A DNA stretch of 64,000 bases from Mobula hypostoma (GCF_963921235.1 NC_086127.1:5518001-5582000), one strand, 5' to 3'. Positions 21,480-60,514 are shown, counted from the first letter of the stretch. Notes: generated from the sequence alone by a model not told the origin. Translations and numbers: made by a program.

Positions 21480-21546
21480 ATGTTGGAAACTTTTTACCGC
21501 ATCAAGGATACCTACTATCTGGTCATTCTGGCTATCACTGTGCCCG
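21480..21546 (+). CDS. GPR139/GPR142-like GPCR copy 1, exon 1 (MLETFYRIKDTYYLVILAITVP)
   Basis: 67 nt ending at G|GTAAGA, phase 1. Homologous exons at 33017 and 53167; supplies the first half of TM1. Confidence 0.85.
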
Positions 21547-21774
21547 GTAAGAAATATTAAGTGGTGTGCCATCTTTTACCTAAAGTCAAGAGCGCCGTGC
21601 TCAGTGCTGTCAGCGATGATACTGAAATGCTACTTGATAGAAGTGGAAAGCTGTTTTACTGAAATTTTCTGTAGATGCGGATGGCATAAAAGAGAAAGAG
21701 AACGAAAAACATGTACCGGCTGTATGATTTGCGTCGCGTGAAATGCCGTACTGCGTGATATTAAACAATACCGC

Positions 21775-22180
21775 ACTGAAAAGATTAGCATTGGTGGGAA
21801 GATGAATGCTAGTAAGTACAGGGAGATCATTGATAAAAACCTCCTGGCCTCCGCCAGAAAGGGTAAACTGGGTAGGAAGCTCGTGTTTCAGCAGGACAAC
21901 ATCCCAAGACACGTTGCTAGAGCAAACGGGGATTGTCTTCAAATATTGAAAATTGATATCCTTGAGGGGCCCAATCGCAGCCCTAACCTTAACCCGATTG
22001 GGCATCTCTGTCACAACCTCAGGATTCCTGTGCACCACCGCTAACCTGGCACAGCTTGAGAAGTTTGTAAGGAGGAGTGGGTAAAACTTGCTGCATCACG
22101 TTGTAGAAAGCTAATAGAGACTTATCCAAAAGTAATATCGGCTGCCCTAGTTGTGATGGATTATTCAACTGAGTACTGAG
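21775..22180 (+). mobile_element. Tc1-like transposase 3' fragment in intron of copy 1
   Basis: MNASKYREII..LVFQQDNIPRH..SPNLNPI (DD34E-type motifs); homologous copy at 33310-33705. Confidence 0.85.
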
Positions 22181-22268
22181 CTTAGGAATGTTTATATTCT
22201 CCAGAATATTCCAAGCTGAGAATGGATGTACATTTCCAAATGAAATTCTGAACCCGAATCAGCTACTA

Positions 22269-23696
22269 CAGTGCCTTGTAAAAGTACCCAGCGCTCAACA
22301 CTTTGTTCACATTATTGAGTATTACAACCGGCGATTGTGATCAATTTAACTGGGAATGTTTACTTGTGAATCGTATACTCCCGTTTTCACGGTAGAGAGC
22401 GAAAAACATGGAATATTGTGAAGCATGAAAATCTAAAATAAATCGGAAACTGAAGTTATTCATGTCCCATTGCTCAGTACTTAGTTGAACCACCTCTTGC
22501 AGCAATTACAGCAGTAGTCTTTTTAGAGAAGTCTCGATTAGGTTTTGTGCACTGCGGTGAAAAAGATTTCCTGATCTTCCTTGCAAAATTGCTCAAGCTG
22601 TGCCAGGCCAGATGCGCAGGCGCAGTGGACAGCCATCTGGAGGTCCTATCAGAGATTTTGGATCGGGTTATGGTCAGGACTCTGAGGGGATGACTCAAAC
22701 ACGTCAATGCTCTTCATTGGAAGGTGCTCTATTGTTGTGAAAGTTTTCATCCAGGATCTCTCTACATTTAGCTCACTCACCTTCCCATCAATCCTGACCA
22801 GATTTCCCGTCTCTGTTGCTGAAAAGGATCCACATAGCATGACGGGGACGCAACACGCATCGCTAAAAACGTATTTTGCCCGTAAAGACTTTGCTTACAT
22901 GGGTGTGGAAGACAGCCTCGTGCTCAAATCAGACTGAAATTGAAATCTTTGGCCTCAACAAGTAAGCAGCATGTGTGCCGTAAATCTAATACTGCGCTTT
23001 GACCAGGCAACGCAAACCCTACCGTAAAGTGTGATGGAGGTAGCGTCGTGCTGTGAGGATGCTTTTCAGCAGCAGAGACTGGAAATGTGTCCGAATTGAT
23101 GGGAAGATGAATGCTGGTGAGTACTGAGAGATCATAGGTAAAAACCTGTTGGTCTCTGCCAGAAAGCTTAAACTGGGTAGGAAGTTGGTCTTTCAGCAGG
23201 ACAACATCCCAAAACACGTTGCCAGAGCAACGGTGGAGTGGCTTCAATGGCTGAAAATTGTTATCCTTGAGGGGCGGAATCGCAGTCCTCTTCTTTACCG
23301 TTGTACGTCTGTGTCACGACCTCAGGGGTCCAGTCCACTAACGCTCCCCGACTTACCTGGCACAGCTTGAGAGTTTTGCAAGGAGAAATGGGCAAAACTT
23401 GCTTCATCACGATGCACAAAGCTAACAGAGACCTACCCAAAAAATAATATTGGTTGCACTAGCTGTGAGCGATGATTCATATAAGGTGCATGGATACTTT
23501 TGAAATGCTGACATTACAGTGTTTTTATTTTTTTCATGCTTTACAACTTTGTCTGTTTGTTTGCGCTCTGCTGTGAAAAATAAAGAACACGTGATTCACA
23601 AATGAAAAGTCTCAGTTAATCTGATAAAAGTCCCTGGTAGTAATGCTCATTTCTGTGAAGATAGAGTTGGGGACTAATACTTTTAGAAGGCAACAT
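22269..23696. mobile_element. Fold-back Tc1 derivative: two transposase 3' halves in opposite orientation
   Basis: Left end TA|CAGTGCCTTGTAAAAGTA and right end TACTTTTAGAAGGCAAC. The left arm carries the transposase C-terminus on the minus strand (AVIAARGGSTKY; FSATETGNLVRIDGK) and the right arm on the plus strand (GGSV..FSAAETG..FQQDNIPKH). Confidence 0.75.
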
Positions 23697-24448
23697 AAAT
23701 ACTATTGGGATGTAACCATTATACTATCGATATGTCATGTACTGTCTTGTACATTTTATTAGTCGCTGGTTAATCGCAACTTTGAACGTTCGTTGAACGC
23801 ACAGGTCACTTCGGGACAACTGACAGATTGCTATTGTAACATGATGGCACATGAAAACAAAATTCTTGGCATGTCAGTCTTCGCATTTTTTGTTTGTTTT
23901 CTTTTCTGCAGATACGTTCGTTTCGTTTTCCGCGATATACGAGATTCCCGGTGTTCATTAGTGAGGTGACAAGAAATAGCATCTTGACCTTTACTGTCCG
24001 AAATATGTTAATCAAGGCAAAACTTCCTGTACAGTGGCAATCCACTAACATTTGGAGTGAAGGAGCAGACATTTCAAGCACATTTACAATCAACATATTT
24101 AAATTTTGTCTGAAAGGCACTTGCATACTGCAAATATGCACAGAATACCTTGCTTAATAATTTGTTTGCTTCATTGATTATTTGCTGATTGTTGATGTGT
24201 TTATCGACTCCTCCTTCCTCTCGCTAAATTTCAAAAGAGTTATTGCTCAGGAATGTTTACCTTTTGATTTATGACGTTTCTGCAAATAAACTGCATCTGA
24301 CAAGCAGGGAACTAGTTGTGCACCAGCCGACAATCCTTATATTGGGGAAACAAACGTACATTGGCGGGCATAGGGGTAAAGGGTGAGCAAGAGATAGACT
24401 TTAAACTCGTAGTATCTATCAGGGTAGGTCCAGCACCAAGGAATATTT

Positions 24449-25300
24449 CATAAGACCTTAAGACATTGGAGCAGAATTAGGCCATCTGGCCCATCGAGTC
24501 TGCTCCGCCATTCAATCAAGGCAGATTCTTTTTTCCCTCCTCCTCAACCCGATTTCTGGGCCTTCTCCCCGGAACCTTAGATGCCATGTCCAATCGGGAA
24601 ATTATCAATCTCCGTCTTAAATACACCCAACGACCTGCCCTCCACAGCTGCATGTGGCAAGAAATTCCACAAATTCACCACCCTTTGGCTACATAACTTT
24701 CTCTGTATCTCTGATTTGAAAGGGCGCCCCAGTGTCCTGACACTGTGCCCTCTTGTCCTAGACCTCTCCCACCATGGGAAACATCCTTTCCACATCTACT
24801 GTGTCTGGACCTTTCAATGTTCGAACGGTTTCAGTGTTCGAATATCATCCTTCTGAATTCCGACGAGTACAGACCCAGAGCTATCAAACGTTCCTCGTAC
24901 GATCACTGGTCTTTCCCAGAATCATCCTAGTGACCCTCCTTTGGACCCTCTCCAATGCCAGCACATCTTTCCTCAGATGTGGGGCCCAAAACTGTCCACA
25001 GTACTGAAAGTGAGGCCTCACTTTATAAAGCCTCAACATCGCATCCTTGTTCTTGTATTCCTGTACTCTTCATAGTGTTCTGCACAAGGAATCCCAAGTC
25101 CATATGCATCTCAGATTCCTGGATTTTCTCCCCGTTTAGAAAATAGTCCAGATATTTATTTCTACTACCAAAGTGCATGACCATACATTTTCCAAATTTG
25201 TATTTGATTTGCCACTTCCTTGCCCATTCCCCTAAAATATTGTCCTTCTGCATCCTACCTGTTTCCTCAACACTACCTGCCCCTCCACAGATCTTCCTCT
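24449..25300 (-). mobile_element. CR1 3' fragment present only in the intron of copy 1
   Basis: RTRGHS..GRPFKSE..SQRVVNLWN; the flanks are contiguous in the paralogue at ~35010-35030. Confidence 0.8.
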
Positions 25301-26702
25301 GCTGACATGTTAATTGGTGAATTGGAGAAACAAACGACTGTAATCCCCAGAGATACAAAATACACAGTTTGAAACTAATCTAATTCGAACACTGACAGGC
25401 CTCAATAGAGGCCTCATGGAGAATCTGTTTCCTACAGTGAGGGAATCGATGATAACAGGATAGGAGGACGTGTCTTCAGAGCCGAGTTGAGGACCAACGA
25501 GTTAAAATAAAACGTGGTGAGTATGTGGAATCCCTTTGCCTCAGCCGTTTATGAAAGCTAATGCATTGGGATATTTAAAGGAGAGGTTGATATGTCCTTA
25601 ATTAGTTTAGGTGTCACAGTTTATGGGGATAAGGCAGGAGAATGGGTTGAGAATGATAATCAACCTGCTACGATGGAATGACGGAGCACACTGGATGTGT
25701 CGAAGGGTCTAAATCTGCTCCCATGTCTCATGGCCTTTATGGGAGCGATAAGGAAACGGCCAGTTGATTCCGTAAGGGTCCGAAGTTTCAGAGATCAGGG
25801 AAGAACTGCGGAGACCCGGAAATGGAAAGCCGACGGCGGACTGTGATCCTACTCTGCACCATTCGCTACTTCATCAGAGATGATTAGTTTCAGAGCGGAA
25901 TTGTAGATAGGATAATGTTTTCAAGCTCGTTGTCGTCGGGACAATGGGAAAAATGGAAAATCCGGGAGATGATCAGCAGGTTTGTCCGCATCCATAGGAA
26001 AAACAAGAATATAAAGAACGTTTCAGGCCGAAGAACCTTTCTCAGAACTGGGAAGGAGACAATGTTAGGTCTCTTGATGCCCCTTTCTGATTCAGTTGCC
26101 CTTCTCTGATGTTCAATCAATTTGATCAATTGCCGTTTAAATCAATTTGATCATTGCCGTTTGCACTGATAGTGAAGGTCATCCCGGGGAATGTCTTTTG
26201 CTCTGTATGTACTTAATCCTATACCCATCCATTTTCCCTGCTTGCGTGGATCCATTCATCCATTGACTGGTAACATTGCCGAGAATTTATCCCTCCGAAT
26301 ACCCCGCTACCACTCGGAGAGAGGCGCCCCCTTACACGCTCGCACTGCAGCATGAGGTACCGCCTACAACTCCAAACCAGTTCTAACGAGCTGCTATAAA
26401 CTGGACTTCTCTTCCTACAGATCAGACCTGAGAGCCGAGTACCTGAAGAACTTTCGTTTCTGGGCCCAGAATTTTAGCCTCTGCATTGTGTTATAAATTT
26501 AGTCATTTCAATCAGAAAATTTTGTATCCTAATATTCAAAGCTCAAAGTAAATTCTGATCAGATATCTATTTATCACCATCTACCAACTTGAGGTTAGTT
26601 TTCTTGCTGGCATTTACAGGAATATTAAGAAATGCAATATAATTCATAGCAGAATAAGACAAAGTTTAATTCTATTCCTGTTTTCTCTTCTCTGACACCC
26701 AG

Positions 26703-27607
26703 TGAACACAGTGGCGATTTCAATCCTGTCCCGGGGGAAATGTGGCCTCTCCACCTGCACCACACGCTACCTGGTTGCCATGGCAGCGGCGGATCTGACG
26801 GCTGTCGTCACTGCATTCTTTGCACGGATCGAGTACTATTCCTCCGGATCCTTCCTGGCGACGTACCCCTTGTGTAGCATTATCTTTGTACTGCAATGTG
26901 CTTCCAGAGACTGTTCCGTCTGGCTCACGGTCACCTTTACCTTCGATCGGTTTGTCGCCATTTGTTGTCAGAAGTTCAAAGCCAGCTATTGCATAGGAAA
27001 GACCGTGTCTTTAGTTCTGGCGATCACCTGCACTATTATGTGTTTTAAAAATATCCCCTTCTATTTCGTTTATAAGCCCAGAGAGATACTCGATGGTGTA
27101 TTGTGGTTTTGCAAGGTCATTCCAGCTTATTTCACTGAACACCAGTGGGTGAGCTTTGACCGATTCGACAAGAGTTTAACCCCTCTGATTCCATTCGCAC
27201 TGATTCTGATCCTCAACGCCCTGACGGTCCGGCACATTTTAGCTGCCAGTCGGGTTCGTAAGGGAATGAGGGGTCAGAGAAAGGGGGAGAACTGCAGTGA
27301 CCCGGCAATGGACAGCAGGCGGCGCTCTGCGATCCTCCTCTTCACCATATCCGGCAGCTTTATCATTTTGTGGTTGGCGACAGTTGTCAATTTCTTCAAG
27401 TATAACGTCGGAGGGACAGATCCCAATAACTACACCGATTCTGAATTTAACTTACAAGCACTTGGATACATGTTACAGAACCTGTGTCTGTGCACGAACA
27501 CGTTTATATATGGAGTAACACAGTCTAAGTTCAGAGAGCAGTTCATAGCCGCAGATAAATGGCCAGTGATCACAATTGTACACTTAATCAGGAAACAAAG
27601 CAACTGA
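26703..27607 (+). CDS. GPR139/GPR142-like GPCR copy 1, exon 2 (intact; spliced protein ~323 aa)
   Basis: Polypyrimidine tract and CAG acceptor at 26700-26702. 7TM motifs YLVAMAAADL (TM2), SVWLTVTFTFDRFVAIC (TM3), KNIPFYF, TPLIPF..LN, SFIILW, TNTFIY..SKFR. Confidence 0.9.
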
Positions 27608-28099
27608 CGGCAGCCAGGGTTTATTCCGAATGGCTCCAGACTATGATGTGATACTGGAATCCAGATATTGTGACCACTCGCTGAAAATAAAAGCAATAGT
27701 CAGTCAGAATATAAATCTAGAAGAGGCCAAAATGTTAAATCGACAACTTTGTTGTTTGTTCTTTGGAGAAATCTCTCGCCAAGATACACGATTCAGGTTT
27801 CAAGCCCGAATAATGCGATTTCCGGTAGGCAAGTGCAAGGAGAACAAAATAATTGTCATTCCAGATCCGATGCAAAAAAGACAACAAAAAGATTTAAAAA
27901 AACACAATACTACTATTACTATTACTACTACTACTACTAGTACTGATGATTATAACGATGATGATGATCATAATAATAATAATAATGTTCATCGTCATTA
28001 TAGTCCGGACAATCCATAATCACCGTCGGGATCTAATGATTCTGGATACACAAGCAAGAACAACAGATTTACTAGATATGGTCATTTCAATCACAATGT

Positions 28100-30350
28100 T
28101 TGGCCAATGGGAAATTCCCTTTTCGGCGATGGAGTGGAGATTCTCGACAAAGCGATCCCCCAATTTACGTCGGGTTTCACTCATATAGTGGAGGCCGGAT
28201 CAGGAGCTCCGGATAGAGCGGGCAAACCGAGCAGATTCGCCAGTGAAGAGTTGCCTCGGTGCGAAGGACTTTTTGGGGCCTTGAATAAGGGATGGAGTGA
28301 ATGTGCAGTTATAACAATTTATCTTCATGTGGGGATAAGGGCTGGGCTGGGGGATAATGGGGAGTGACGAATGGACAAGGCAACCACGGCGGGAGTGATT
28401 CCTGCGGAAAGTGGAGAGGGGTCCATAAGGATTTGCTTGGTGGTCGGGTCCCGGTGAAGATGATGGATGTTGCTCTGCCTGATCTGCGGGCTCAGGGGGT
28501 GGTAAGTGAGGACGAGAGGATCCCTATCCCTGTTAGGGCAGCGGGAAGATGAAGTGTGAAACGATGTCCGGAAAATGGAGAAGAAGCGAGCGAGGGCGGC
28601 ATCTATGGTGGAGGAGGGGAAATCCTATTCGTGTAGACAGAAACATCTCTGATGTCCAGGAAGGGAAAGCCTCTTTCTGGGAACAGTTGCGGCGGAGAAA
28701 ATGGAACTGAGAAAAGGAATGGCGCTATAAAGGAGACAGGGTGGGGAGCGCTATAGTCAAATTATACACGGAAATCCGTGGTTTTATAAAATATTTCGGT
28801 AGACAGTTTGTCTCTTGAGATGGAGACAGAGAGAATGAGAAAGGGTGGAGCAGTGTCAGAACTAGGCCGAGTGAACTGGAGGGCAGGGTGGAAGCTGGGG
28901 GCAATGTTGATGAAATTGACAAGTTCAACATGGTTGACCGAAGCACCATCAATTTGGTCCCTAATGAGGGTAGACAGAGTTGGAAACATTACCAGGGAAA
29001 GCTTAGGACATGGAGTGCTCTAGATATGCAACGTAGAGGCAAACATAGCTGAGGCCCACGCGTGTGCCCACCTTGAGTTTGGAGAAAGTCGGAGAAGCCA
29101 AAAGAGAAATTGTTGAATTTCAGAATCAGGTCCAGCAAACGGAGGAGGGTGGTGGTGGAGGGAAAGTGGTCGTGTTTGTCGTCGAGAAAGAAGCATGGAG
29201 CTTTAAGAGCTTCATGATGGGGTGAGAGTGCATTGGGACTGGATATCCAAAGTGAAAGTGAAGCCACCAGGACCAGGGAATTGAACGTTGTTGAGGAGAT
29301 CGGGACCATGTGAAGTGATGTGGACGGACGTGGGAAGATACTGAATAAAGGGGGATAAAATGGAGGCGAGTTCACTGTAGCAGCGGAAGGCAGGATCAAT
29401 GGACCTATCCCGATGGTGAGGTTTGTGGATGTTGGGTCGGAGGACGAAAAGAACAGAGCGGGGTAAAGGAACGGAGTTTGGTGTCATTGGATGGGAGATC
29501 TCGAGAATTAATGACGTTGGTGATGGAACGGGAGACAATGTTCTGATGGTCCTGAGTTGAACCTTTTGCAAGTGGTAAGTAAGAGCAGATGTCTCAAAGT
29601 ATCCGCCTGGCCTGAGGGAGGTAGAGACTACCACAGAACACCCTTTACCTGCGCGTCTATAGGGAGGTTGGGATTAGTGTGGAGATAGTGGACGGCAGTG
29701 CGTACAGAGTGGGTAAGGTTCAAAGAGGAGAGACGAGTGCTGAAGTCGATATCGTTGATGCGTGGTCCGAAAAGATCCAGAGTAGACACAGAAACAGAGC
29801 GGGATGACCAAGCAGAGGAGCAGGTTTGGTGTCGGGAAACGGGACTGACAGGTGCTGGGCGAGGAATTCTTGCCCAAGAAGTGGGCTCGGAGACGGAGAC
29901 GATTGATGAAGAGCTCGGCTTCGCAGCGGGCGCTGAACTCACTGAGGTGCGAGCGAAGATGAACAAAACGCTGAGAGCAGAATATTTCGCCTCAGAGAGG
30001 GAGTGGTCGAAAGGTATTGTGAAGACACGGCAGGGATTAGAGCTCTGGAAGAGAGTTGGTGGTATCAGAAGCCAGGTAAGGTTTGGATGTTCATGTAAGT
30101 AGGGCGGGAGCAAGATGGAGGCTCCAACGATCCAACAGGTAACGGGTGAACCGGAGAGACTAGGGGAAAGAGGATCACGGGGGACCAGAAACAGTTAGAA
30201 AGGTCGCAGCCGGGAAGCGGGCTTCTCCGAGTTCGGGACTGGACCCGGATCTGTAGGTGCCGTAATTAATGGTCTGAAGACGTCCGGGGGCCAGCTGAGT
30301 GCATCCTAGAACAATGTGCGAATATGGAGAAAAAGATTGATGTTGTCCGG
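28100..30350 (-). mobile_element. Penelope-like element remnant (RT + GIY-YIG endonuclease)
   Basis: FTLDIQS, LILKFNNFSFG, TEIFYKTTD; GLHYMSETRRKLGDRFVENLHSI near 28130-28200 (YIG-type motif). Many frameshifts. Confidence 0.85.
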
Positions 30351-30544
30351 GCAGAGACGTTCGTATCATCAATACTCTTCAAAAAGTAGAATAGTGTTAG
30401 GCACTCTGGATTTCTATATCACAAGTTACACAATAAATCAGAAGCAGGCTTTTCAACTAACATCAGACAGATGGGCTGGCTTCATAAATAGCATCAGGAT
30501 TCAGCCTCGGCCTGCTGGATTGTTCCTGTCTAAACCGCCTGTCT

Positions 30545-32974
30545 GAATCCCTTCCCTTCTCCATCCTTCTGTTACCTCGTCTGAAGCCTCGCCTCGCCTG
30601 AAACCTTGCCTCGCTTTGCCTCGCCTGAAGTCTTGCTTCGCCTGCACCGCTGTCAAGTTCAATCGCCGGAGCAAGATAATGAACTGTCTATCGTTGTTTT
30701 GAACTGTCTCTGTGTCCTCGCCTTCGCTAGGTAGGTCCGGCCGTCTGTCGCTACCTTGTGTTGAGAACCGTCTCGTCGTAGTCTGCATTCTGCGTAATGA
30801 GTCCCGACCCTATGTCCTGTTTCCAAGGAGAGTGTCATGGTCCGGTGCGGGAAGTTCGCATTCCGGTTCACAGTCCAGTCCTTGGACTCAGGACTCCGGG
30901 TCTTCCAGCTGTCCCTTGCTTGGTTGAGTTAATCGTAGGCACCTGACTTCCATCTTGGGGCTTTGAATATAAGTAGCCTTGGGAACAACTGTGGGCTGCT
31001 TGTTTGTCTTGTCAAGATTGCCTGGGAGCAACCTGGCAGTGTAAGGCTAGTGTGGCCACTTGCCAACTTTAGGCCGCCTTGGAGAACCATCGCTTCATGG
31101 AGCCTTGCTGTCGGTAGTCAGAGATGTCTTTGTGGTATGGATTCGATTGTCTCCCGGGCCAGCTGAGTGGCCGTCAGACACTCTGAGCTACGTAGGGATC
31201 CGACTGTTTCCGTAGCCAGCCGAGATCGCTGGCCGTTACTGCGACTCGGAGCAACCCCGAAGCAGAGTTGGAACTGTCTGTCGTTCTTCGATGTTTGTCT
31301 CTTCTTGTCCTCGCCTCCGTAGGGAAAGTCAGGCCGTTCTGCCGTTGTCTTGCGGGGGGATCTGTCTTGTCCTGTCCTCGCCTCTGTGGAGTAAGTCAAA
31401 CTGTTCTGCCGTTGCCCTGCTGGGAACCTGTCTTGTCTTGTCTTTGCCTCTGTTAGGTAAGTCCGGCCGTTCTGCCGTTACCCGACGGATGGACCTGTCC
31501 CACCTTGGTGGGGAGATAAAGTTGAGTCCCGGCTTGTCTAAGGATAAGTCCTGGCTCTATGACTATGTACTATCCAGTCTCATGTTATTGTCGTGTTAAA
31601 GATGAGTCCCGGCTTTTCGAAGGATAAGTCCCAGCTCCATGTTGATGAACAGTTCCCAGTCTGTCTCCGAACTCCAGCCTTCGAGTTATCAGCCTCCGCA
31701 TTCCAAGCCTCAAGACCCCACCTTGTCTCAAGCTCAAGTCTCAAGGCCCCAGCCTCCCTCCAAGCTCAATCTCAAGACACCAGCCTGTCTCCAAGCTCAA
31801 GACCAAGACTACGGAGCTGGTGGTAGACCTGAGGAGAGTTAAGGTACCGGCGACCACTTTTTCCATCCAGGAGGTCAGTGTGGACATGGTGGAGGATTAC
31901 ATATACCTGGGGATACGAATTGACAATAAACTGGACTGATCAAAGAACACTGAGTTTGTCTACAGAGCCGTCTCTATTTCCTGAGGAGACTGAAGTCCTT
32001 TAACATCTGCCGGACGATGCTGAGGATGTTCTACGGGTCTGTGGTGGCCAGTGCGATCATGTTTGCTGTTGTGTGCTGAGGCAGCAGGCTGAAGGTAGCA
32101 GACAGCAACAGAATCAACAAACTCATTCGTAAGGCCAATGATATTGTGGGGGTGGAGCTGGACTCTCTGACGGTGGTGTCTGAAAAGAGGATGCTGTCTA
32201 AGTTGCATGCCATCTTGGACAATGTCTCCCATTTATTACATAATGTACTAGTGGGGTACAGGATTACATTCAGCCAGAGACTCATTCCACAGAGATGCAA
32301 CACAGAGCGTCATAGGAAGTCATTCCTGCCTGTGGCCATCAAACTTTACAACTCCTCTCTTGGAGGGTCAGAGACCCTGAGCCAATAGGCTGGTCCTGGA
32401 CTTATTCCCGGCATAATTTACATATTACTATTTAACTATTTATGGTTTTATTACTATTTAATTATTTATGGTACAACTGTAACGAAAACCAATTTTCCCT
32501 CGGATCAATAAAGTATGACTATGACTATGACTATGACTATGACTACTAAGACTGTCTCCAAGCTCAGGATTAAGATCCCAGCCTTCTCCAAGCTCAAGAC
32601 CAAGACGCCAGCCTGTCTCCAACCTCAAAACCATGACCCCAGCCTGTCCCCAAGCTCAAGACCAAGACCCCAGCCTCAAGACTCAAGACCCCAACCTGTC
32701 TACAAGCCTCTAGACCCCAGCCACATCCTGTCCTGTAGTCATGCCATGTCCTTGCCTGGTTCTGAGGCCCAAGCCCGAGGCAAGACCCAGGTTCTGGGTC
32801 CTTGCCCATTCTCTGGCTTAGAGCCCAAGCCAGGATCCTAGTTCATAGTTCCTTGTCCGATTTCCCTGTTTCTTGTCCACGTCCTAGCCCAGGTCCTGCA
32901 TCCACGTCCTGTTCCTAGTACTTCAGTGTCTGTGTCTTGCATTTGGGTCAGTTCCCAACGCCCCCATTGTGACA
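30545..32974 (+). mobile_element. LTR-like non-coding element with internal short repeats, ending ...TGTGACA 42 nt before the ATG of GPCR copy 2
   Basis: CACCTG..TATAAG segment (~30940-30972), internal imperfect repeats (GCCTCGCC, CAAGCTCAAGACC), LTR-like CA terminus. 5' boundary and TSD not identified. Confidence 0.5.
31800..32545 (+). mobile_element. Rex1/Babar-like LINE 3' fragment nested in the LTR-like element, (TATGAC)n tail
   Basis: KTKTTELVVDL, YLGIRIDNKLD, RLYFLRRLKSFNIC, RKSFLPVAIKLYN; AATAAA + (TATGAC)5. Confidence 0.85.
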
Positions 32975-33016
32975 GACTGACAGCTGCTGAAATCCTCTGA
33001 TCAATTCACTCAGAAA

Positions 33017-33083
33017 ATGTTGGAAACCTTATACCGCTTCAGAGATACCTACTATCTGGTCATCCTGGTTATCGCTGTGCCCA
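33017..33083 (+). CDS. GPR139/GPR142-like GPCR copy 2, exon 1 (MLETLYRFRDTYYLVILVIAVP)
   Basis: 67 nt, A|GTAAGA donor, phase 1, paralogous to 21480-21546. Confidence 0.85.
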
Positions 33084-33309
33084 GTAAGAAATATTAAGTG
33101 GTGTGTCATGTTTTACCTAAAGTCAAGAACGCCGTGCTCAGCGCTGTCACTGATGATAATGACATTCTACTTGGTAAAAGTCGAAAGCTGTTTTACTGAA
33201 ATTTCCTGCAAATGGCATAGAAAAGAATGTAAATAAAAACTTGTACCGGCTGTAAGTTTCGCGTCGGGTGAAATGCCGTACTGCGTGATATTAAACAACA
33301 GCGCAATGA

Positions 33310-33866
33310 AAGGATCTGCATTGATGAGAAGATGAATGTTGGTAATTACAGAGAGATCATCGATAAAAATCTGCTGGCCTCTGCCAGAAAGCTTAAACTG
33401 GGTAGGAAGTTCGTGATTCAATCGGACAACATCCAAATACGTCGCCAGAGCAACAGCGGAGTGGCTTCAAATGCTGAAAATTGATATAGTTGAGGGGCCC
33501 AATCACAGCCGTACCCTTAACCCGATTGAACATCTCTGTCACGGTCTCGGGATTGCTGTGCACCACCGATAACCTGGCACAGCTTGAGAAGTTTGCAAGG
33601 AGGAGTGGGTGAAACAATCTCCATCGCGTTGTGCAAAGCTAATAGAGACGTATCCAACAGTAATATTGGCTGTACTAGCTGTGAGGGATTATTCAACAAA
33701 GTACTGGGTTTAGGAAGGTTTATATTCTCTAGAATATTCCAAGATGCGAATGGATGTTCTTTGTGATGGGAAATACACTGCAGGACATTTCCAAATGAAT
33801 TTCTGAAACCCAATCAGCTACTACAGCGCCTTGTAATGCTACCCGGAGCTCAACAGTTTGTTCACC
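33310..33866 (+). mobile_element. Tc1-like fragment shared with copy 1, plus only the left TIR stub of the fold-back element (33822-33866)
   Basis: Aligns with 21775-22310. Confidence 0.75.
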
Positions 33867-46837: not shown

Positions 46838-46872
<35 letters not shown>

Positions 46873-46882
46873 GTGTGTGTGT
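46838..46882. repeat. (GT)n microsatellite within a LINE-derived 3' segment
   Basis: Seen directly in the sequence. Confidence 0.9.
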
Positions 46883-49475: not shown

Positions 49476-51334
49476 AAATTTGTATAAATCTCTGCAAAAT
49501 TACATCCGCACTTTCTATTCGCTCTAGCGCCATTTTCTCTGCCAAACTCCCGCCTGTCGTTGCCGTTGTTTGCATCCATGTGTAAATTATTCGGGTATTA
49601 ACTAGTACATTCAGGGTCGCGGGATATTGAAAGCAGCCGCGGCCGGGGTCAGTTCTTTAGTTTGTTAATGATTCGCAGCAGTGACGTCACAGGGTATGTA
49701 ACTGCGCTGATGAACTGTTCTCTGAACTTGGCCTGAGTCACCCCACAAATAAATGTGTTTGTGCAACAGCTTAAATTCTGCAACATGTATGCGGCCTGAT
49801 CCAGGATATATTCGGAATCGGTGAAATTGTTGGAATCTGTTTGAGAAATGTTATAATTTAAGAAATTAATAACAGTGGATAACCACAGTAGAATGAAGCT
49901 GCCGGATATGGAGAAGAGGAAGATCACCGACCTCCTCCTGCTCTCCATCTCCGGGTCACTCCGATTGTCTCCCCTGCTCTGACCCCTTAGTGCCTTGCGC
50001 ACTCGACTGGCCAACAGGTTGTGTCTGACTATCAGAAAGTTGAGAAGCAGGATTAAACCAAAGGGGATCAATGGAGTTAAAATCCTGTCCAAACTATCAA
50101 AAGCCACCCGTCCTTGCTCAGTGTAATAACTTGCCCGTAATTTGCAGAACCAAAAAACGTTATTAATCAGTGTCCCCGGTTTATGTATAAAATAGTAAGG
50201 AACGTTTTTAAAGCAGATCAGTACGCAGGTAATCATCAGAACCAGAGCCGCAGTTTTCCCGGTTCAATATTTTGTTTTCAGCTTCTGACAACAAATGGCG
50301 ACAAATCGATCAAACGTGAAGGTATCGGTGAACCAAACGGAACAGTCTTTAGATACACACAGCAGTACAAAGATAATGCTACACAATGGGTAGATGTCCC
50401 AGAAGGATCCTGGGAAATAAAAACTAATCCTCCTCACTATAACGGCAGTGCTCACAGCCATGAGGTCCACCGTTGCCATGGCCACCAGGTACCGAGTTGT
50501 GCAGGTGGAGAGGTCACATTTTCCCCGGGACAGGATCCCAATCGCCACTAAATTCACTGCAAAAAAAGAGAAGAGAAATAAAATCGAGAAAACTCAGAGC
50601 AGCAGATTTCTGTGCTCGGTGTATATTGCCCTCTACTGGAGGATGTCGGAAGGTTTAACAAGTGATACTGTCCATCATTCTCCCTTCCAAACATCCAGCT
50701 CCCCGTGTGCAACCGAGACAAAGTGCTGGCATCAGCTGAAAGCGAAACACAACTTGTTATGTCAGAACCAAGATACAGGTCTACCTGTTGCAGCAGTAAC
50801 AGGGAATATGCGGGGAAATCAAATTCAAAACACACCAGGGCTGTGAGGGATTTGAGTAAGAAGGCCCAAGTTTATTCAGAAGTTTTAAAAAAACGGCGGA
50901 GTCGATCCCAGCGCAAGATTTCAATTGTAATATTTAACAGAGGTTTGGGTAGGTCTGAAAACGATAGGGATGGTTTTGAAGAACATCTTTCGGTGCAGGT
51001 AAATTGGATTAGGTTTAAGATCATGTCGGCATAGACTGAATGGAAAGGAAGTTTACTTCTGTGCCGAAATACTCTAATAATCTGAAAAGGAGAAACAATA
51101 TTTTCTGGTCCAGTCCCGCCTTTTATTATTTTAAAGATATTTCTGGAAGACGCCGCCATAGCAGAGATGGAAATATAAATTCCTGTTCCAACCATAAACT
51201 CACGAAATTGTAAAGAGAGACCAAGAAAACTGTTCAAACGCCATCTGAATTTATTAAGTAAATGGTCAAACCCATGGAAGTTATAAGGAAAAAATGGTGC
51301 AGATTGTCCTACGTGTCCCTGACAGGACCGCCAG

Positions 51335-52805: not shown

Positions 52806-52807
<2 letters not shown>

Positions 52808-52863
<56 letters not shown>
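52808..52863. repeat. (TTA)~18 microsatellite
   Basis: Seen directly in the sequence. Confidence 0.95.
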
Positions 52864-52866
<3 letters not shown>

Positions 52867-54206
52867 CATTTTATGGTTGTTATTATTATTTATCGCTATT
52901 ACCATTAGAACTAGTATAATTATCATTACTAGTGCCATACGTTGAGGATGTAGGATCGTGGAAACGATATCACTGTTCCACTCTTGGCTCAAGCAAAATC
53001 ATAGCATCAGCAGGCAAACAATTTCAACTATAGATCAAACCGGGAGACAATCTCGAGTGTAAAATTACATAAATAACAAAATAAATTTATAGGTGCTTAC
53101 CAGGGACACCAACATTTGCAATTATGATATAATATATTTTCCTGATACTGCAGAATGTCTCCAGCATGTTCTACGTGATGAATCTGTTCCACTGATTTAC
53201 AAGCAACGACACTGAGGTATTTGTTCCGGCTGTCTTTAGTATAAACCCCTCCACATCTCCACAGGGACAGTAAGGTTACATCATCATTCAGATTCACAAT
53301 TGTTTTAATTAAATCTGGCGTCGATATGTTTGAAACTGTTTGGATGTACTTATCTATGAATACCCCAGAGTACCGACAATTCTAATCAAGTTAATCAAAG
53401 ATTAAGGCGAATTTCTTTCAATCAAAGATGAGGCTCATCATTAAAGCAGGCTGATGTTAAGCAACATATCCCGCATTATTTCACTGTGGGCCTTTGCTCA
53501 GTTGTGGCCGATAGTCAGTACTATTTGCTACAGTCAACTCTCATTCTATTAATACCAAATGTGACCCTCTTTAACTGAGAGATTTCAAGTTAAAAACTTT
53601 ATTTTATCTCAAACATGAAACACCTATATTGGCTATAGCTTGAAAGATTGATAGATGTCCTCAATTTTACCGAAATTACACGGTTAATAATGTTTCAATT
53701 GTTAAAAAAAATCAATAATTTATTCCAGTATCAAACTTTCGATATAAACTTCAAATAAAATTGATTTTAAAGCCGCACAATAATACAAAACGTCAACTTA
53801 TTTCCGGAAGACACTTCTAAGAATGTGAATTTCTAAATGGTTTACTTAACTAAACACTTCTATTAATATTGTACCGTAAATCACATCAAACATTTTACTA
53901 CATGGTTGTGTAGATATCTGAAACAGTACTGTCCTCAGTCAGTACATTACCTTAAATAATTCTGCTCATCAAACTGATGACGGACTTTATACCAAACATG
54001 CTCCGCACTCAAATCAACCGCACTCCACTGGAACAGCTCTACCACTCGTTGATATACGACTGGCAACTTTATAGTGGCCAATTTATCCATCAACCCATAA
54101 CTTTTTGGAAAGTAGAAGGATACCGGAATTCCCATTGGAAAACTGGTAGACACCAGAAATTTCCCCCACCCCGCGAGTCTCTCTGAAATAGCCCTGAAGA
54201 TGAATA

Positions 54207-54636: not shown

Positions 54637-54702
54637 AGTCCTTTCCAACTCTAGGGTCGGCCGCTATGACGTATATCACTGTCAATCTTTAACATGCGAA
54701 CC

Positions 54703-55229: not shown

Positions 55230-56062
55230 GAACCTCTTTCCAGTGTTCAAGTTCTAATACTGAATTCTAATTAAGCTACAAGCATTTCACTCTGCCCTGC
55301 ATGATTTTCTTCTGCGTTATGAGAGAATATTATAACAGTTCATGTATTGGCAGACCATCATTCGGATTGAGTGTGGTTAAAATATCTGCAATTGCTCTGA
55401 TTTGTCGTTTTAATTTCTATCCGAGCCCAATCTGTCCATAACTGGAGAACTAATTGCTGAATTCCAAGGTCGCATAATTCATCCGTCAAGTTTCCATGTT
55501 GAATTTAGCAACTTCGGGTAAGTCATCTTCAGTTCTTGAAAGAAAAAAGACCTATTATGCCATACTATTAACAGCTCTGCATTTCACAAATTCCGCATAA
55601 GACTTCGATTGTACTTCGTTGCCCGCCTGTCTGTCTATTTAGCTATCTATCTGTCTGTCTGTTCATCTGTATCTCTGTCTGTCGGTCTGTCTCTCTCCCC
55701 ATAATGTCCACATTTACCCGACAATCGGATGTTCGAAGCAATAACACAGCAATCCTGGCTTTGCAGTACGAGAGGTATCTCGTTGTCTTACTGATTGTTC
55801 CGCCCTCCCTGCTGCTTCAGTTTTACGTCAGCTGATACACGACGGATGCAGGCACGTAAACCAACCGAGTCCATCAAACTCACTCTTAGACTAATCAAAC
55901 ACAGATCACATTCTTACTTTTCCACTCATTCCCCTTGTATTTTCCAGAAGTAAAGACGAAACATTGCAAGGAGAAAATGGCGACTGTCGTTTTGCCAACA
56001 ATCAGTGTTGTGCTTTGTTTATTAAAAAACACTACCCTTCTCTTTAATCTGTGAGCCTAGGT

Positions 56063-57730
56063 CAAGGGTTTTTAACCTGCTGTCGGGGATCAGTGGATAG
56101 ATAAACGTAGATGGGAAAAATACATCTTTATTTTCACAAAACTCCAACTGAAATTTATCATTTCCTTCAAATACGGATTTAGGCAAGAAACCATAGTAGG
56201 ATAGGCAGTACTTGTGACTTTGTCATCAATAGAAATTGCTCAAAATACAGTTTACATCACACTCATCACTGTTTCGAAATTACGACGGTTTTCAGACCCG
56301 CCATTAGATCAAAAGTGATTTCAGTCTCCTTGTCCGTCGATACACCTGTGAAGTAGCTGTACAACTATCGGACAACCCTGCGGCTAGTAGTCGTTCAGTC
56401 ACCAAACGGTGACGTCACGTGTTCTCACATTTGTAACTCAGACATCTAGGTTGTTTTCCATCATTCCCAAACTCAATAAGGCCAAGAAACTGGTTGTAGA
56501 GGAAAACCAAAGGTCCGTGAACCAGTAATCATCGGAAGATCACAGTAGAGAGTGTGAGTAACTTAATTTCCCGGGTGTCGGTATCTCAGAGGACCTGTCC
56601 TGGACCATCAAGGAAGTGTTATTGCAAAGAAATCACGACAGCGCCTGTACTTCCTCAGGATGTCTTTGCAAACTTTGGCAATCTTCTCTAGATGTGCGGT
56701 GGACAGTGTGCTAACTGGCTGCATTGCGACCTGGTGTCAGAACCCCTCAATCATCAGGCTGCTGAACAAAAGGTGACAACTACACTCATTTAAGGACTTC
56801 CTGCCTGTTATTTTTTGTTATTTATTTATATCTGCATATCGACAGTTTGTTTACAGTTAACAGTTCCTGATGTCTACAGTTTACATTTGCTGATCTATAG
56901 ATTTGATAACTATGTCCACAGCAACGATAGTCTCTGATTTGTATGTGATGGCGTGTATGTACTCTGATAATACGTTTTGCTTCGAACTTTTTGAACTTTG
57001 ATCTTTGAACTTATCTGCAATTGCCGCTTGATCAATACGGAGAAGGAGGTGGGTCGTTTTTATTGTGTGTTAAAGTTTTGCAAAACTGGTCAGTTCAAAT
57101 GAGAATTCTTAGCTCTCCGTAAGGCCGCGCTGTCTTTTGTCACACAGAGAGACATATGGGCTACGAGTGTTGACCGGGCAAGTTCAGACACGGTCTGACG
57201 GTTGGGAGAACTGTTGAAGTTACTTAAAGTAACGTTGTACTTTTGTTTACAGATTGTGAAGTGATACAGGTCGTGCCCTGCGTTGCAAAACCTGTGAGTA
57301 GCAGAAGCTCTTCCTGTTTTTTCGTTTTTCTCTCCCTACTTCCTTAGTGTAGACAGACTGCGTTATGACGTAATGACGTCCAACATGACATGCGTGTTGC
57401 TTTATCAGAGACCACCTCACAATTTACTGTTCTTATTCAAGCTGAGCTATCACAGCATTCACACTGATAAGTCTTTAAAACTGAAATTTAATTTTAACCT
57501 GCCTATGTTTTAAATGCCTCACCTTGTCATAAATAGGCACACATATACTACTACATCATTAATTCATTTTAAAATATTTTATAACTGCATTTCAATATAA
57601 TTGGTTTATTTTGCAATTCTCTGTATTTTATTCCATATATTTAAATACATTATTCTGAGAAGGGTCCATAGGCTTCACCGGACTGCCAAAGGCGTCCAAG
57701 CCTTTAAAAAATAAAGGTGAACAACCTCAG
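56063..57730. mobile_element. Non-autonomous hAT (Charlie-like) element with nested Rex1-like fragment (~56460-57010)
   Basis: Degenerate TIRs CAAGGGTTTTTAACCT / AGGTGAACAACCTCAG, subterminal GGGTCCATAGGCTTCACC, imperfect 8-bp TSD GCCTAGGT/GACTAGAG with a CTAG centre. Confidence 0.7.
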
Positions 57731-57920
57731 GACTAGAGGGATAATTGACAAGATGGTTTGGTTCTATGAAAGGAGGTCGGCTTATCCACTGCTTCGTGGT
57801 GGGTGGGCTTCAGGATGTTGGGTTGTAATCCCACTGTTACCACTTTCTTTTATAATGATGTTCAGCATGCTGTCAGTCAAGTACGTTTTATTTACCAGTC
57901 GTGTGCAGATGTCGCTAAGG

Positions 57921-58271
57921 CCGAAGCCCCGCGTCTGCGTGTCAGTGAGTCAGGAGAAGTCGGAGGACCGATGCCTGTGAATTCTCGAGTCCTGAGGGTG
58001 GATTACTGTCTATATGTCTGAGTCGGTGATTGGGTGGATCGAGGTTAAGGAAGGGGCTTGTTTCTCCGTGGGTTTTTTTCGCTGTTTCTCTGTTGTTGTT
58101 GCTTGTGTTGTTCTGCGGACCGATGTGGGCGAGCTATGTTTGCGTCAGAATGTGCGGTGATTCTTACGGGATGCCGCTAGCACATCCGTAGCTCGTGTTG
58201 TTATTAACGCAAACGACGCATTTCACTGTATGTTTCGGTGTACATCTGATAAAAATAAATCTGAATCTGAA
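57921..58271 (+). mobile_element. Short retroposon with (CTGAAT)n tail inserted in copy 4
   Basis: Ends AATAAATCTGAATCTGAA; TSD GCTAAGG/GCTGAGG. Confidence 0.7.
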
Positions 58272-58774
58272 GCTGAGGGTTCAGGGTGAGGGAAAGAATC
58301 AGACTGACCCAGAGGCTGAGAACAAAGGGAGCAATGTGATTTTGTTCTTCACCATATCCGTCAGCTCCATTCTCCCGTGTCTAACCTCGGTTATGGATCG
58401 CTTATATCATAATATTGCTGGAGCAAATCCCAGTAATTATAACCAATCTTGGTATATCTTTGGCCATCTCGGATACACGATAGAGAATCAAGCATGTGTT
58501 CGAACCCGTTTACTTCCGAGTGTCTCTGCGAATTTCAGAGATTATTTTTTAAACGCTGTGAAATAACCCGCGGCCATAATTCCTCTAATTGTTAATAAAG
58601 CGAACTCTTGTTCTGAGCCAGTGTTGCGCCCCAGATGAAACTACACAATGATTGAGTGTCATCTGTAAATGATGCGGAAGTGAGGGGGATACGGCAATTA
58701 CTTTGGCTGACAAATCTAACACTCTGTGCGGCCTAGTCGGCCAGGGATGAATTGGATCAAATCTCACAAATCTG

Positions 58775-59625
58775 TTCAAGTGCAACTCATCCGATGAACA
58801 ACTCATGTGCAAAAGAAGACAAACTGTGCAAATACAAAGTCAATGAATAATACTGAGAACATGAGTTTTGGAGTTCTTGACAGTGCGACCACGGGTTATG
58901 TTCTCTGATCAATTCAGTGTTGAGCTGAGTGAAGTTGTCCTCGCTGGTTCGGGATAATAACGTTCAGAGTTGAATTTCAAAGTTGAAAATAAATTTATTT
59001 GAAAAGTACATGCATGTCATGATAAACCCGACAACTCATTTTATTGCGGGCATTCAGAGTAAATCCGAGAAACATAATAGACTCAATGGGAGAACCGCAA
59101 ACAATAGGACGAAAACAGCAATCTGGCAAAAGACCGCAAGCTGTGCAAATGCGAAAGAGAATATAAATTAATAGTAATAATAATACACATACTAATAAAT
59201 TTTAAAAACACTAAAAAACGAGAAATTGAGCCGCAGGCCCTTGAAAGCGAATCCATAGGTTGTGGGAACGGTTGAGTGATGGGACGAGTGAAGTTGAGCG
59301 AATTTACCCCCTTTGTTTAAAGAACCGGTTGGTTGAGCCTTAATTACTGTCCCTGAACCTGGTGCTGTGGGTTCTGAGGTTTCTGCGCCTTCTTCGTGAT
59401 GGCAGCAGCGAGAGGAGAGCGAGACCTGGATGGTGGGATCCTTGAGAATGGGTGACGCTTTACTGCGATCACACTCCATGTAGATGTGTTCAGTTGTGTG
59501 GAGGGGTTTACCCGTGATGCACCGGGCTGTATCCACGCCGTTTTGCAGGCTTCACCATTGAAGGGCATTGGTATTCCCATCCCAGGTCGTGATGCAACCG
59601 GTCAATATACTCTCCACATGCCGAA
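58775..59625 (-). mobile_element. Rex1/Babar-like 3' fragments
   Basis: MDTARCITGKPLHTTEHIYMECDRSKASPILKDP. Confidence 0.65.
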
Positions 59626-59687
59626 TCCTCGGATTGTTCCAAAGAGCAAGTTCTGCAACGTCACACGAACTGCTTTCACTCCTGACT

Positions 59688-59997
59688 TGTTACGACACGG
59701 ACCCCAACGCTCCTGACTCCGGGCTTCAGACGGTCTAATTCTCCGGAATATGGACAGCTGGCGCGGCCCCTTTAAAGATTAAAGCCGCCCCGCTAATTGG
59801 CGGACATGTTTTGGCGCTAAGTTTTTTAATATTTAAAGAACTGAATCTCGGTGCTCAATCGTCAGCTGTACCTGGATTTGTGTCCAGCGTCCAACTTATA
59901 AGCCTGTCTTGTTTCAGTCTTGTATCATGTCTCGGTTCCAGTCTCGGATACCCCAGCACTGGGACCCGAACCATCCTCGCCCAGGTCTCTCGTCACA
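59688..59997 (+). mobile_element. LTR-like segment (TGTTACG...CGTCACA), no TSD found
   Basis: Inverted terminal heptamers and internal TTTAAA. Confidence 0.4.
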
Positions 59998-60054
59998 CAA
60001 CCTCCCTTCATCAGCCTGCCCATTCATCGCAGTGACCATCCGAGGGAAGAGTGT

Positions 60055-60514
60055 CCCGGGGTGGGTAGAGTATAATCGGTTTGATAAGGTCGTCGTCCCG
60101 TTGCTCCCTTTCGGTGTAATCGTACTCTTCAATATCCTGACAGTCAGGCACATTTTACTGACCAGTCGGGTCCGTAAGGCGCTGAGGCGACAGGGAAAGG
60201 GGGAGAATCAGAGTGACCCGCAGATGGAGAGCAGGAGAAGGTCTGTGATCTTACTGTTCACCATCTCCGGCAGCTTCATCCTTCTGTGGTTGACGACTCT
60301 GATTGATTACCGATATTATAACGTTTCGGGAAGAAATCCCAATTATTACAACCCTGCTGAATATATCTTCGGTCAGATCGGATATATACTGCAGAACGTA
60401 AACCTTTGTACAAATACGTTCATTTATGGCGTGACTCAGGCCAAGTTCAGACAGGAGTTTGTGAACGCTGTGAAATATCCGGTCAACGTTCTTATCCGGA
60501 TTATTAATAAATAA
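60055..60514 (+). pseudogene. GPR139-like GPCR copy 5: open 3' half only (end of ECL2, TM5-TM7, C-tail)
   Basis: PGWVEYNRFDKVVVPLLPFGVIVLFN...MESRRRSVILLFTISGSFILLW...CTNTFIYGVTQAKFR; no upstream TM1-4 sequence found. Confidence 0.8.

What the first reader, a model, noticed from the sequence alone, without database searches (positions are those of the whole stretch)
21480..60514. Birth-and-death cluster of GPR139/GPR142-like receptors: candidate lineage-expanded chemoreceptor family
Seen: five loci of one receptor type in 39 kb (two intact, one with a single stop, one split by transposons, one 3' half only), with very short N-termini and two-exon structure in copies 1-3. Known: mammalian GPR139 and GPR142 are single-copy receptors activated by aromatic L-amino acids, and tandem expansion with pseudogenisation is typical of chemosensory receptor families. 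Inference: this may be an amino-acid/peptide-sensing receptor repertoire (olfactory, taste, skin or gut) of a cartilaginous fish. Such genes may be annotated automatically as GPR139-like; I cannot tell from here whether their function has been studied.
Basis: partly seen in the sequence, partly recalled or inferred. Interest (0 to 1): 0.8.

Follow-up and report, generated by a model that had tools for sequence, protein, structure and literature searches.

The report
Ray orphan-receptor gene cluster, shark-expanded family
This stretch of a devil-ray genome holds two working genes and three broken copies of an orphan cell-surface receptor family that sharks and rays have multiplied from one ancestral gene into hundreds; it is a plausible but untested set of chemical sensors, and only a distant cousin of the mammalian receptor GPR139.

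Summary
There are five loci of one class A GPCR type in 39 kb. Two are intact, and copy 1 is 100% identical to Mobula hypostoma XP_062892782.1. One has a single TGA stop, one is decayed pieces and one is a 3' half. Two short relics lie in introns.

The family is real and very large: 2157 database hits, 103 clusters at 50% identity, and every named hit among the best 120 is an elasmobranch. It forms one chondrichthyan clade. Its sister is a single-copy gene of amphibians and sturgeon.

GPR139 is the nearest solved relative (profile E 8.5e-25, next best 1.8e-17). Identity is only 22-23%, and four of the five GPR139 ligand-contact residues are replaced. The genes are therefore not GPR139/GPR142 orthologues, and aromatic amino-acid sensing cannot be inferred.

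Variation is concentrated on the extracellular and pocket side (entropy 1.65 vs 0.82 bits). This fits a ligand-diverse repertoire. Tissue expression could not be tested, so a chemosensory role remains a hypothesis.

I found no paper describing the expansion. First readers of this scan noted the same family on other pieces of this genome (27 notes).

The parts
21480..21546 (+). Copy 1, coding exon 1 (22 codons + 1 base; N-terminus and start of TM1). The donor is G|GTAAGA.
   Evidence: Spliced to exon 2, it gives a 323-aa product identical to P0002 (M. hypostoma XP_062892782.1).
26703..27607 (+). Copy 1, coding exon 2 (TM1 end to C-terminus, stop included). The acceptor is CCCAG|TG. Intact.
   Evidence: (7tm_1, E 4e-16).
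25759..25863 (+). Relic of an older copy inside the copy 1 intron (ICL3 motif ...GDPEMESRRRTVILL...).
   Evidence: It is about 90% identical to its twin in copy 2, against about 78% for the surrounding intron.
29758..30075 (+). Upstream exon used by the RefSeq model of copy 2 (XP_062892784.1, 430 aa). It adds a 107-aa non-receptor N-extension. It is probably a 5' UTR exon or a prediction artefact.
   Evidence: The donor is GTAAGG, joined to the acceptor at 33013.
33017..33083 (+). Copy 2, coding exon 1. The donor is A|GTAAGA.
36347..37251 (+). Copy 2, coding exon 2. Intact.
   Evidence: (7tm_1, E 4e-19).
35444..35548 (+). Relic ICL3 fragment in the copy 2 intron, twin of 25759-25863.
38243..41102 (-). 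LINE retrotransposon (AP-endonuclease and reverse-transcriptase ORFs) between copies 2 and 3.
   Evidence: Exo_endo_phos E 5e-13; RVT_1 E 9e-11.
49649..50556 (-). Copy 3 pseudogene, exon 2. It has a single in-frame TGA at 50264-50266 replacing a conserved Cys, plus W172R, T198I, L235F and Y7.53C.
   Evidence: It is 88% identical to the intact Hypanus P0009.
53101..53167 (-). Copy 3, exon 1 (MLETFCSIRK...). The donor is G|GTAAGC.
55947..58605 (+). Copy 4, a decayed pseudogene. Pieces lie at 55947-56079 (aa ~114-159), 57735-57971 (aa ~148-230) and 58243-58605 (aa ~201-323). There is a frame break in TM7, and no exon 1 or TM1-3 was found.
60050..60514 (+). Copy 5, a truncated pseudogene (ECL2 to C-terminus only). 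It is 93% identical to the intact Hypanus P0014.
   Evidence: A dispersed-repeat fragment lies at 59341-59529 upstream.
21428..37514 (+). Tandem segmental duplication that made copies 1 and 2. The matching blocks are 21428-22310 with 32965-33865, and 25415-27872 with 35086-37514. Identity is about 82% overall, and 87-99% in exon 2.

Best explanation
The region is one small tandem cluster of a very large orphan class A GPCR family that is specific to cartilaginous fishes.

Origin. The family descends from a single gnathostome gene. That gene survives as one copy in amphibians and sturgeon. GPR139 is only its nearest characterised cousin.

How the cluster evolves:
- Local segmental duplication made copies 1 and 2.
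- Partial gene conversion has homogenised most of exon 2 of these two copies.
- Insertions of LINEs and other DNA have occurred.
- Copies 3, 4 and 5 and the two relics have become pseudogenes.
- Three old batoid subtypes sit side by side.

How the receptor most likely works (inferred). Each intact gene encodes a 323-aa seven-helix receptor with almost no N-terminal ectodomain, so ligands must bind in the transmembrane pocket or at ECL2. Family members share a nearly invariant cytoplasmic face: ICL1 SRGKCGLS, DRF, ICL3 DPEMESRRRS and N-T-x-x-Y/helix 8. They differ at pocket positions 3.32, 3.33, 3.36, 6.51 and 7.39. This suggests many different small ligands feeding one common transducer, which is the logic of a chemosensory or other cue-detecting repertoire.

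The tissue, the ligands and the G protein are not shown.
For: Shown:
- Five loci plus two relics, with canonical splice sites.
- Pfam 7tm_1 hits and a confident 7TM+H8 model, pLDDT 82.8.
- 2157 homologues.
- 103 clusters at 50% identity with E<=1e-30, then a sharp gap. The ESM Atlas lists 26 large clusters named GPR139 among its hits.
- In the careful ML tree, the chondrichthyan family is one clade (97/87). Its sister is the amphibian + sturgeon clade (100/100), with a joint support of 99/95. The window copies fall in three batoid subclades.
- The amphibian orthologues appear as one cluster per species, at 66-74% identity.
- A family profile against the PDB puts GPR139 first at E 8.5e-25; the next hit is at 1.8e-17.
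- Extracellular-half entropy is 1.65 bits against 0.82 bits for the intracellular half, p 1e-18. The pocket sites are hypervariable.
- Copy 1 vs copy 2: dN/dS is 0.40. dS is 0.37 in TM4-ECL2 against 0.083 elsewhere.
- Copy 3 carries 5 changes at 62 conserved sites, against 1-3 in the intact copies.
- Subtype A has 2 genes here but at least 4 distinct proteins in M. birostris and in Hypanus.

Inferred: ligand diversity, a common transducer, and a sensory role.
Against: - There is no expression evidence. No RNA run on record holds either intact gene. Three presumed RNA runs of the same species hold none of their words.
- The laid contigs were only paralogue-level matches at 85-95% identity.
- dN/dS is below 1 everywhere, so positive selection on the pocket is not shown.
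- A conserved inside and a variable outside is seen in many GPCR families and is not specific to chemoreceptors.
- A split coding region is unlike OR, TAAR, T2R and V1R genes.
- The cluster lies next to an Ig V-set (Siglec-like) gene. Another reader reports a cluster at a TCR-beta locus. These would fit an immune role as well.
Confidence: 0.5

Rival explanations
1. They are internal neuro-endocrine or metabolite receptors that work like GPR139/GPR142. They would sense aromatic amino acids or related peptides in brain, pituitary or gut, and have merely been duplicated.
For: - GPR139 is the closest solved structure and has the highest identity among Swiss-Prot fold hits.
- The amphibian/sturgeon sister gene is single-copy and conserved at 66-74% identity, like a housekeeping signalling receptor.
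Against: - Four of the five GPR139 agonist-contact residues are replaced: F109 to C, H187 to D, R244 to T and N271 to Y (PMC5430874).
- There are hundreds of paralogues with hypervariable pockets and many pseudogenes. That is not how endocrine receptors evolve.
Confidence: 0.12
2. They are receptors of immune or barrier cells, comparable to chemokine, formyl-peptide or MRGPR expansions. They would detect pathogen- or damage-derived molecules.
For: - The window also carries a Siglec-like V-set domain at 2243-2617.
- A first-reader note places another cluster beside TCR-beta V genes (unchecked).
- Rapid turnover and pseudogenes are also typical of immune gene families.
Against: - The family profile scores chemokine receptors well below GPR139.
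- Genomic neighbourhood is weak evidence.
- Presumed RNA runs of the species, of unknown tissue, hold no words of the two genes.
Confidence: 0.2
3. The cluster is mostly evolutionary debris. On this reading the family spreads by repeat-mediated duplication, and most copies, including the 'intact' ones here, have little or no function.
For: - Three of the five loci plus two relics are dead.
- LINEs and dispersed repeats fill the cluster.
- No transcription was detected.
Against: - Both intact copies keep 59-61 of 62 family-conserved residues, canonical splice sites and dN/dS 0.4.
- Orthologous subtypes stay intact across rays, skates and electric rays.
- The dead copy 3 shows visibly more damage at conserved sites.
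Confidence: 0.08

Closest known systems
GPR139 (human; PDB 7VUG/9M42), an orphan class A receptor activated by L-Trp and L-Phe
   Same: - It is the best solved-structure match to the family profile (E 8.5e-25, 24 bits ahead of the next hit).
- Both lack Pro7.50 in the NPxxY motif and keep W6.48.
- It is the source of the automatic gene names.
   Different: - Identity is only 22-23%.
- Pocket residues F109, H187, R244 and N271 are replaced (PMC5430874).
- The family has DRF instead of DRY and no Pro6.50 in the ray copies.
- GPR139 is a single conserved gene, against hundreds of copies here.
Single-copy 'GPR139-like' gene of amphibians and sturgeon (e.g. Xenopus tropicalis XP_031757816.1, Pleurodeles XP_069092602.1)
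   Same: - It is the sister clade of the whole chondrichthyan family (99/95).
- It shares the ICL3 motif DPEM-RRRS and the FDR[FY]V-CC motif.
   Different: - It shows one cluster per species in the search and is well conserved (66-74% identity).
- It is only about 33% identical to the ray genes.
- It retains Pro6.50.
GPR210A/B, extra GPR139/142-related orphans of coelacanth, gar and fishes (PMC6504862)
   Same: - They are non-mammalian orphan lineages grouped with GPR139/GPR142.
- The Latimeria and teleost proteins P0236 and P0245 are the next clade out in my tree and may correspond to them.
   Different: - The identity of P0236 with GPR210 was not checked.
- That study analysed no cartilaginous fish and reports no expansion.
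Vertebrate class A chemoreceptor families (OR, TAAR, and MRGPR-type expansions)
   Same: - Tandem clusters, birth-and-death with many pseudogenes, and a LINE-rich setting.
- A short N-terminus.
- A variable pocket over a conserved cytoplasmic face.
   Different: - No close sequence relationship.
- The coding region is split by a 2.5-5 kb intron after codon 22.
- No expression or ligand data exist.
Invertebrate FMRFamide-receptor-like GPCRs
   Same: - They are the nearest non-chordate neighbours by language-model features and weak HMMER hits.
- The Drosophila FMRFamide receptor is among the fold hits.
   Different: - Identity is 22-28%.
- They served as the outgroup in the tree.

Membership tests
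Class A (rhodopsin-type) GPCR | Match to Pfam 7tm_1 above the gathering score | tested here: met
   69.6 and 59.6 bits for copies 2 and 1 (cut-off 30.5). The partial copies score below the cut-off, as expected.
Class A (rhodopsin-type) GPCR | Seven-helix fold with helix 8, and the D/E-R-Y, W6.48 and N-P-x-x-Y microswitches | tested here: met
   - the model has pLDDT 82.8 with 7 TM helices, H8 and an ECL2 hairpin.
- D-R-F, W6.48 and N7.49/Y7.53 are near-invariant.
- Variants: T7.50 replaces Pro, and Pro6.50 is absent.
GPR139/GPR142 orthologue | High identity to, and grouping within, bona fide GPR139 or GPR142 | tested here: not met
   - Identity to GPR139 is 22-23%. GPR142 is not among the best 30 fold hits.
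- The nearest non-chondrichthyan kin is a separate amphibian/sturgeon gene.
- A tree containing true GPR139 and GPR142 could not be built, because no tool supplied those sequences.
GPR139/GPR142 orthologue | Agonist-contact residues F3.33, H5.43, W6.48, R6.51, N7.38 (PMC5430874) | tested here: not met
   copies 1 and 2 have C, D, W, T and Y. Only the generic toggle Trp is kept.
GPR139/GPR142 orthologue | Single conserved gene per genome | tested here: not met
   There are 5 loci in 39 kb here and hundreds of paralogues in elasmobranch genomes.
GPR139-related branch of class A (broad sense) | GPR139 is the nearest characterised relative | tested here: met
   GPR139 scores 90.6 bits against 66.5 for the next hit (NTSR1). 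One search gives the same order with a single sequence.
Chemosensory receptor repertoire | Large lineage-specific copy number in tandem clusters with frequent pseudogenes | tested here: met
   Three of the five loci here are dead, and copy number differs between Mobula species.
Chemosensory receptor repertoire | Diversity focused on ligand-contact positions | tested here: met
   - entropy is 1.65 vs 0.82 bits.
- positions 3.32, 3.33, 3.36, 6.51 and 7.39 are hypervariable.
- No dN/dS above 1 was seen.
Chemosensory receptor repertoire | Sparse expression in sensory cells; responses to external chemicals | not testable with these tools
   No RNA run on record holds the genes. The laid contigs were uninformative.

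The most novel reading that the evidence does not exclude
This family is the main, so far unrecognised, odorant or tastant receptor repertoire of sharks and rays. It would fill the gap left by their very small OR, TAAR and V1R gene sets (2+6, 3 and 3 genes in the catshark, PMC11979771). The conserved acidic residues D3.37 and D5.42 would hint at basic or amine-like ligands.
Probability: 0.25. Interest if true: 0.85.

Novelty: new member of a known kind. Interest (0 to 1): 0.55.

Why it matters
Elasmobranchs are known for keen chemical senses yet have few canonical olfactory receptor genes (PMC11979771). A monophyletic class A GPCR family of hundreds of genes that grew from one ancestral gene is an obvious candidate for the missing receptors. 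Failing that, it would be a new immune or barrier sensor system. It also shows that the database label 'probable GPR139' on these genes is misleading. Work on GPR139 evolution or pharmacology should not count them as GPR139. The single-copy amphibian/sturgeon orthologue offers a tractable entry point for de-orphanising the lineage.

Tried and rejected
- Expression. Two run searches found only DNA holders. Laying four presumed RNA runs on copy 2 gave repeat-derived depth and 85-95% paralogue contigs. Several of these end exactly at the exon-2 acceptor (36343/36344). That fits splicing, but it equally fits loss of similarity in paralogue introns, so I count it as no evidence.
- Tree with true GPR139/GPR142. 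No tool returned those sequences as usable ids. Cluster look-ups of weak hits gave only amphioxus, mollusc, pike and unnamed proteins. The structural search could not discriminate among class A receptors.
- Synteny. The M. birostris and Hypanus loci were listed without DNA.
- Short-contig hits P0106 and P0011 are genomic or metagenomic DNA, not transcripts.
- Copy 4 'split by transposons'. The spacers show no repeat match in the window, so this stays unproven.
- Shared promoter. Similarity between copies 1 and 2 starts only about 50 bp before the ATG and ends in a splice acceptor. It is an intron end, not a promoter.
- Literature. Eight searches found no paper on this expansion. No supplements of the catshark paper are held.
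Full report
**What is there**

A tblastn search of the window with the copy-2 ORF, and then with seven homologues, recovers five loci of one receptor type between 21480 and 60514 and nothing significant outside that range.

- Copy 1 has a 67-nt first coding exon (21480-21546, donor G|GTAAGA) and a 905-nt second exon (26703-27607, acceptor CCCAG|TG). The spliced 323-aa product is identical to P0002, Mobula hypostoma XP_062892782.1. The window is therefore that species or a very close relative.
- Copy 2 (33017-33083 and 36347-37251) is intact and 89.5% identical to copy 1. It is annotated as XP_062892784.1 (P0313). That model carries a 107-aa N-terminal extension from an exon at 29758-30075.
- Copy 3 lies on the minus strand (53167-53101 and 50556-49649). 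It has one TGA at 50264-50266.
- Copy 4 is three decayed pieces between 55947 and 58605.
- Copy 5 (60050-60514) keeps only residues 168-324.
- Two 35-codon relics of the ICL3 region sit in the introns of copies 1 and 2.
- A LINE with endonuclease and reverse-transcriptase ORFs lies at 38243-41102.

Two points need qualifying. A conserved acceptor 3 nt before each ATG suggests an additional 5' exon. I also could not show that transposons split copy 4.

**What kind of protein**

The ORFs match Pfam 7tm_1. An AlphaFold model of copy 1, built on a 24-sequence family alignment, is confident (pLDDT 82.8, pTM 0.81). It shows seven helices, helix 8 and an ECL2 hairpin. TM1 starts at about residue 2-10, so there is almost no ectodomain.

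Family-wide motifs are:
- ICL1 SRGKCGLS
- D-R-F
- W6.48 without Pro6.50 in the ray copies
- ICL3 DPEMESRRRS
- N-T-x-x-Y

**How big, and whose**

The word-indexed search returned 2157 hits.

The exhaustive HMMER search of 50%-identity representatives found 103 clusters with E<=1e-30. A sharp drop follows, to full-length hits at 29-33% identity. Those next hits are from salamanders, coelacanth and a teleost.

The salamander protein has orthologues, one cluster per species, across frogs, a caecilian and salamanders (66-74% identity), and in sturgeon (46%).

The careful ML tree of 62 sequences gives this order:
- The chondrichthyan family is one clade (97/87).
- Its sister is the amphibian + sturgeon clade (100/100). 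The two together have support 99/95.
- The next clade out holds the coelacanth, teleost and amphioxus proteins.

The expansion therefore started from one gnathostome gene.

The window's copies all lie in a batoid-only clade (100/99), as three old subtypes:
- A: copies 1 and 2, with M. birostris, Hypanus and Hemitrygon genes.
- B: copy 3, with Hypanus P0009.
- C: copy 5, with Hypanus P0014, plus Narcine and Rhinoraja genes.

The Hypanus counterparts of copies 3 and 5 are annotated as full-length proteins (314 and 324 aa) at 88% and 93% identity to the window copies. This suggests the Mobula copies died fairly recently.

**Relation to GPR139**

A single sequence finds GPR139 as its best PDB match, but only weakly (E 7e-9). 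The family profile makes it clear: 90.6 bits and E 8.5e-25, against 66.5 bits for the next receptor.

Identity is only 22-23%. Fold search cannot separate GPR139 from other peptide receptors, and GPR142 is not in the top 30.

Mutagenesis defined the GPR139 agonist site as F109(3x33), H187(5x43), W241(6x48), R244(6x51) and N271(7x38) (PMC5430874). The profile alignment and the family alignment map these positions to C, D, W, T and Y in copies 1 and 2.

A survey of vertebrate class A receptors already noted extra GPR139/142-related orphans, GPR210A/B, in coelacanth, gar and fishes. It included no cartilaginous fish (PMC6504862).

My conclusion is that these genes are distant relatives of GPR139 and not orthologues. 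Ligands cannot be transferred from GPR139.

**How the cluster evolves**

- Copies 1 and 2 arose by a tandem segmental duplication: 21428-22310 matches 32965-33865, and 25415-27872 matches 35086-37514.
- Introns are about 78% identical, while exon 2 is 87-99% identical in 100-bp windows.
- Overall dS is 0.12 and dN/dS is 0.40. However, dS is 0.37 in TM4-ECL2 (residues 114-166) and 0.083 elsewhere. This mosaic fits partial gene conversion and agrees with an earlier first-reader note.
- dN/dS is below 1 in every part, so both copies are under purifying selection. Positive selection is not shown.
- Copy 3 has changes at 5 of 62 positions that are at least 95% conserved in the family: the stop at C120, W172R, T198I, L235F and Y7.53C. 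The intact copies have 1-3 such changes. Copy 3 is therefore a real pseudogene and not a sequencing slip.
- Subtype A has two genes here. M. birostris and Hypanus each have at least four distinct proteins. Turnover therefore continues between close species.

**Function**

Across 106 family members, Shannon entropy averages 1.65 bits in the extracellular halves and loops, against 0.82 bits on the cytoplasmic side (Mann-Whitney p 1e-18). Pocket positions 3.32, 3.33, 3.36, 6.51 and 7.39 each take five or more residue types. D3.37 (87%) and D5.42 (78%) are kept.

With no ectodomain, this pattern points to many small-ligand specificities coupled to one shared transducer. That is the logic of a chemosensory or other cue-detecting repertoire, and I rate it the most likely reading (about 0.5).

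It remains an inference, for these reasons:
- No RNA run on record holds the genes.
- Three presumed RNA runs of the species contain none of their words.
- The laid contigs were uninformative.

An immune or barrier role (about 0.2) is kept alive by the adjacent Siglec-like V-set gene and by an unchecked note of a cluster at a TCR-beta locus. A GPR139-like endocrine role (about 0.12) and near-neutral debris (about 0.08) are less likely.

**Novelty**

The genes are already predicted in RefSeq under a misleading name. Eight full-text searches found no paper describing the expansion. The recent catshark sensory-genomics paper lists only small OR, TAAR, ORA and TARL sets and no such family.

First readers of this scan noted the same family on other pieces of this genome (27 notes). 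Those are repeats of the idea, not independent support.

I file it as a new member of a known kind: a birth-and-death class A GPCR repertoire. Interest is moderate until expression is known.

Noticed in passing
window 2243-2617 (-) and 453-815 (-): An Ig V-set domain ORF (Pfam V-set E 4e-8, weak CD22-type hit) with a second Ig-like ORF downstream. It looks like a Siglec-like gene next to the receptor cluster.
   Followed up: partly
window 5562-8155 (+): A second LINE, with endonuclease and reverse-transcriptase domains in a 608-aa ORF plus a C-terminal ORF. It is related to the element at 38243-41102.
   Followed up: partly
window 29758-30075 (+): The RefSeq model of copy 2 (XP_062892784.1) adds a 107-aa N-terminal extension from this exon. 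The exon lies in a strongly GC-skewed stretch with overlapping ORFs on both strands. The extension is probably an annotation artefact or a non-coding 5' exon read as coding.
   Followed up: partly
window 21463-21479, 33000-33016, 53168-53180 (-): An AG acceptor lies exactly 3 nt before the start codon of copies 1, 2 and 3 (CACTCAG|RAAATG; CGTAG|AACATG). Similarity between copies 1 and 2 begins only about 50 bp upstream. This suggests a conserved 5' UTR intron.
   Followed up: partly
window 25734-26029 vs 35410-35700: The intronic relic of ICL3 and its surroundings are about 90% identical between copies 1 and 2. The rest of the intron is about 78% identical. The reason is unknown: it could be chance, gene conversion or a regulatory role.
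   Followed up: no
window 54188-54637 and 62018-62614: Two minisatellite arrays seen as ladders of shifted self-matches: offsets of about 96/128 bp at 81-84% identity, and multiples of about 54 bp at about 90% identity.
   Followed up: no
window 35000-35470 and 32800-32956: Very high contig depth from four runs of related organisms marks these stretches as high-copy dispersed repeats. One lies inside the intron of copy 2 and one just upstream of copy 2.
   Followed up: no
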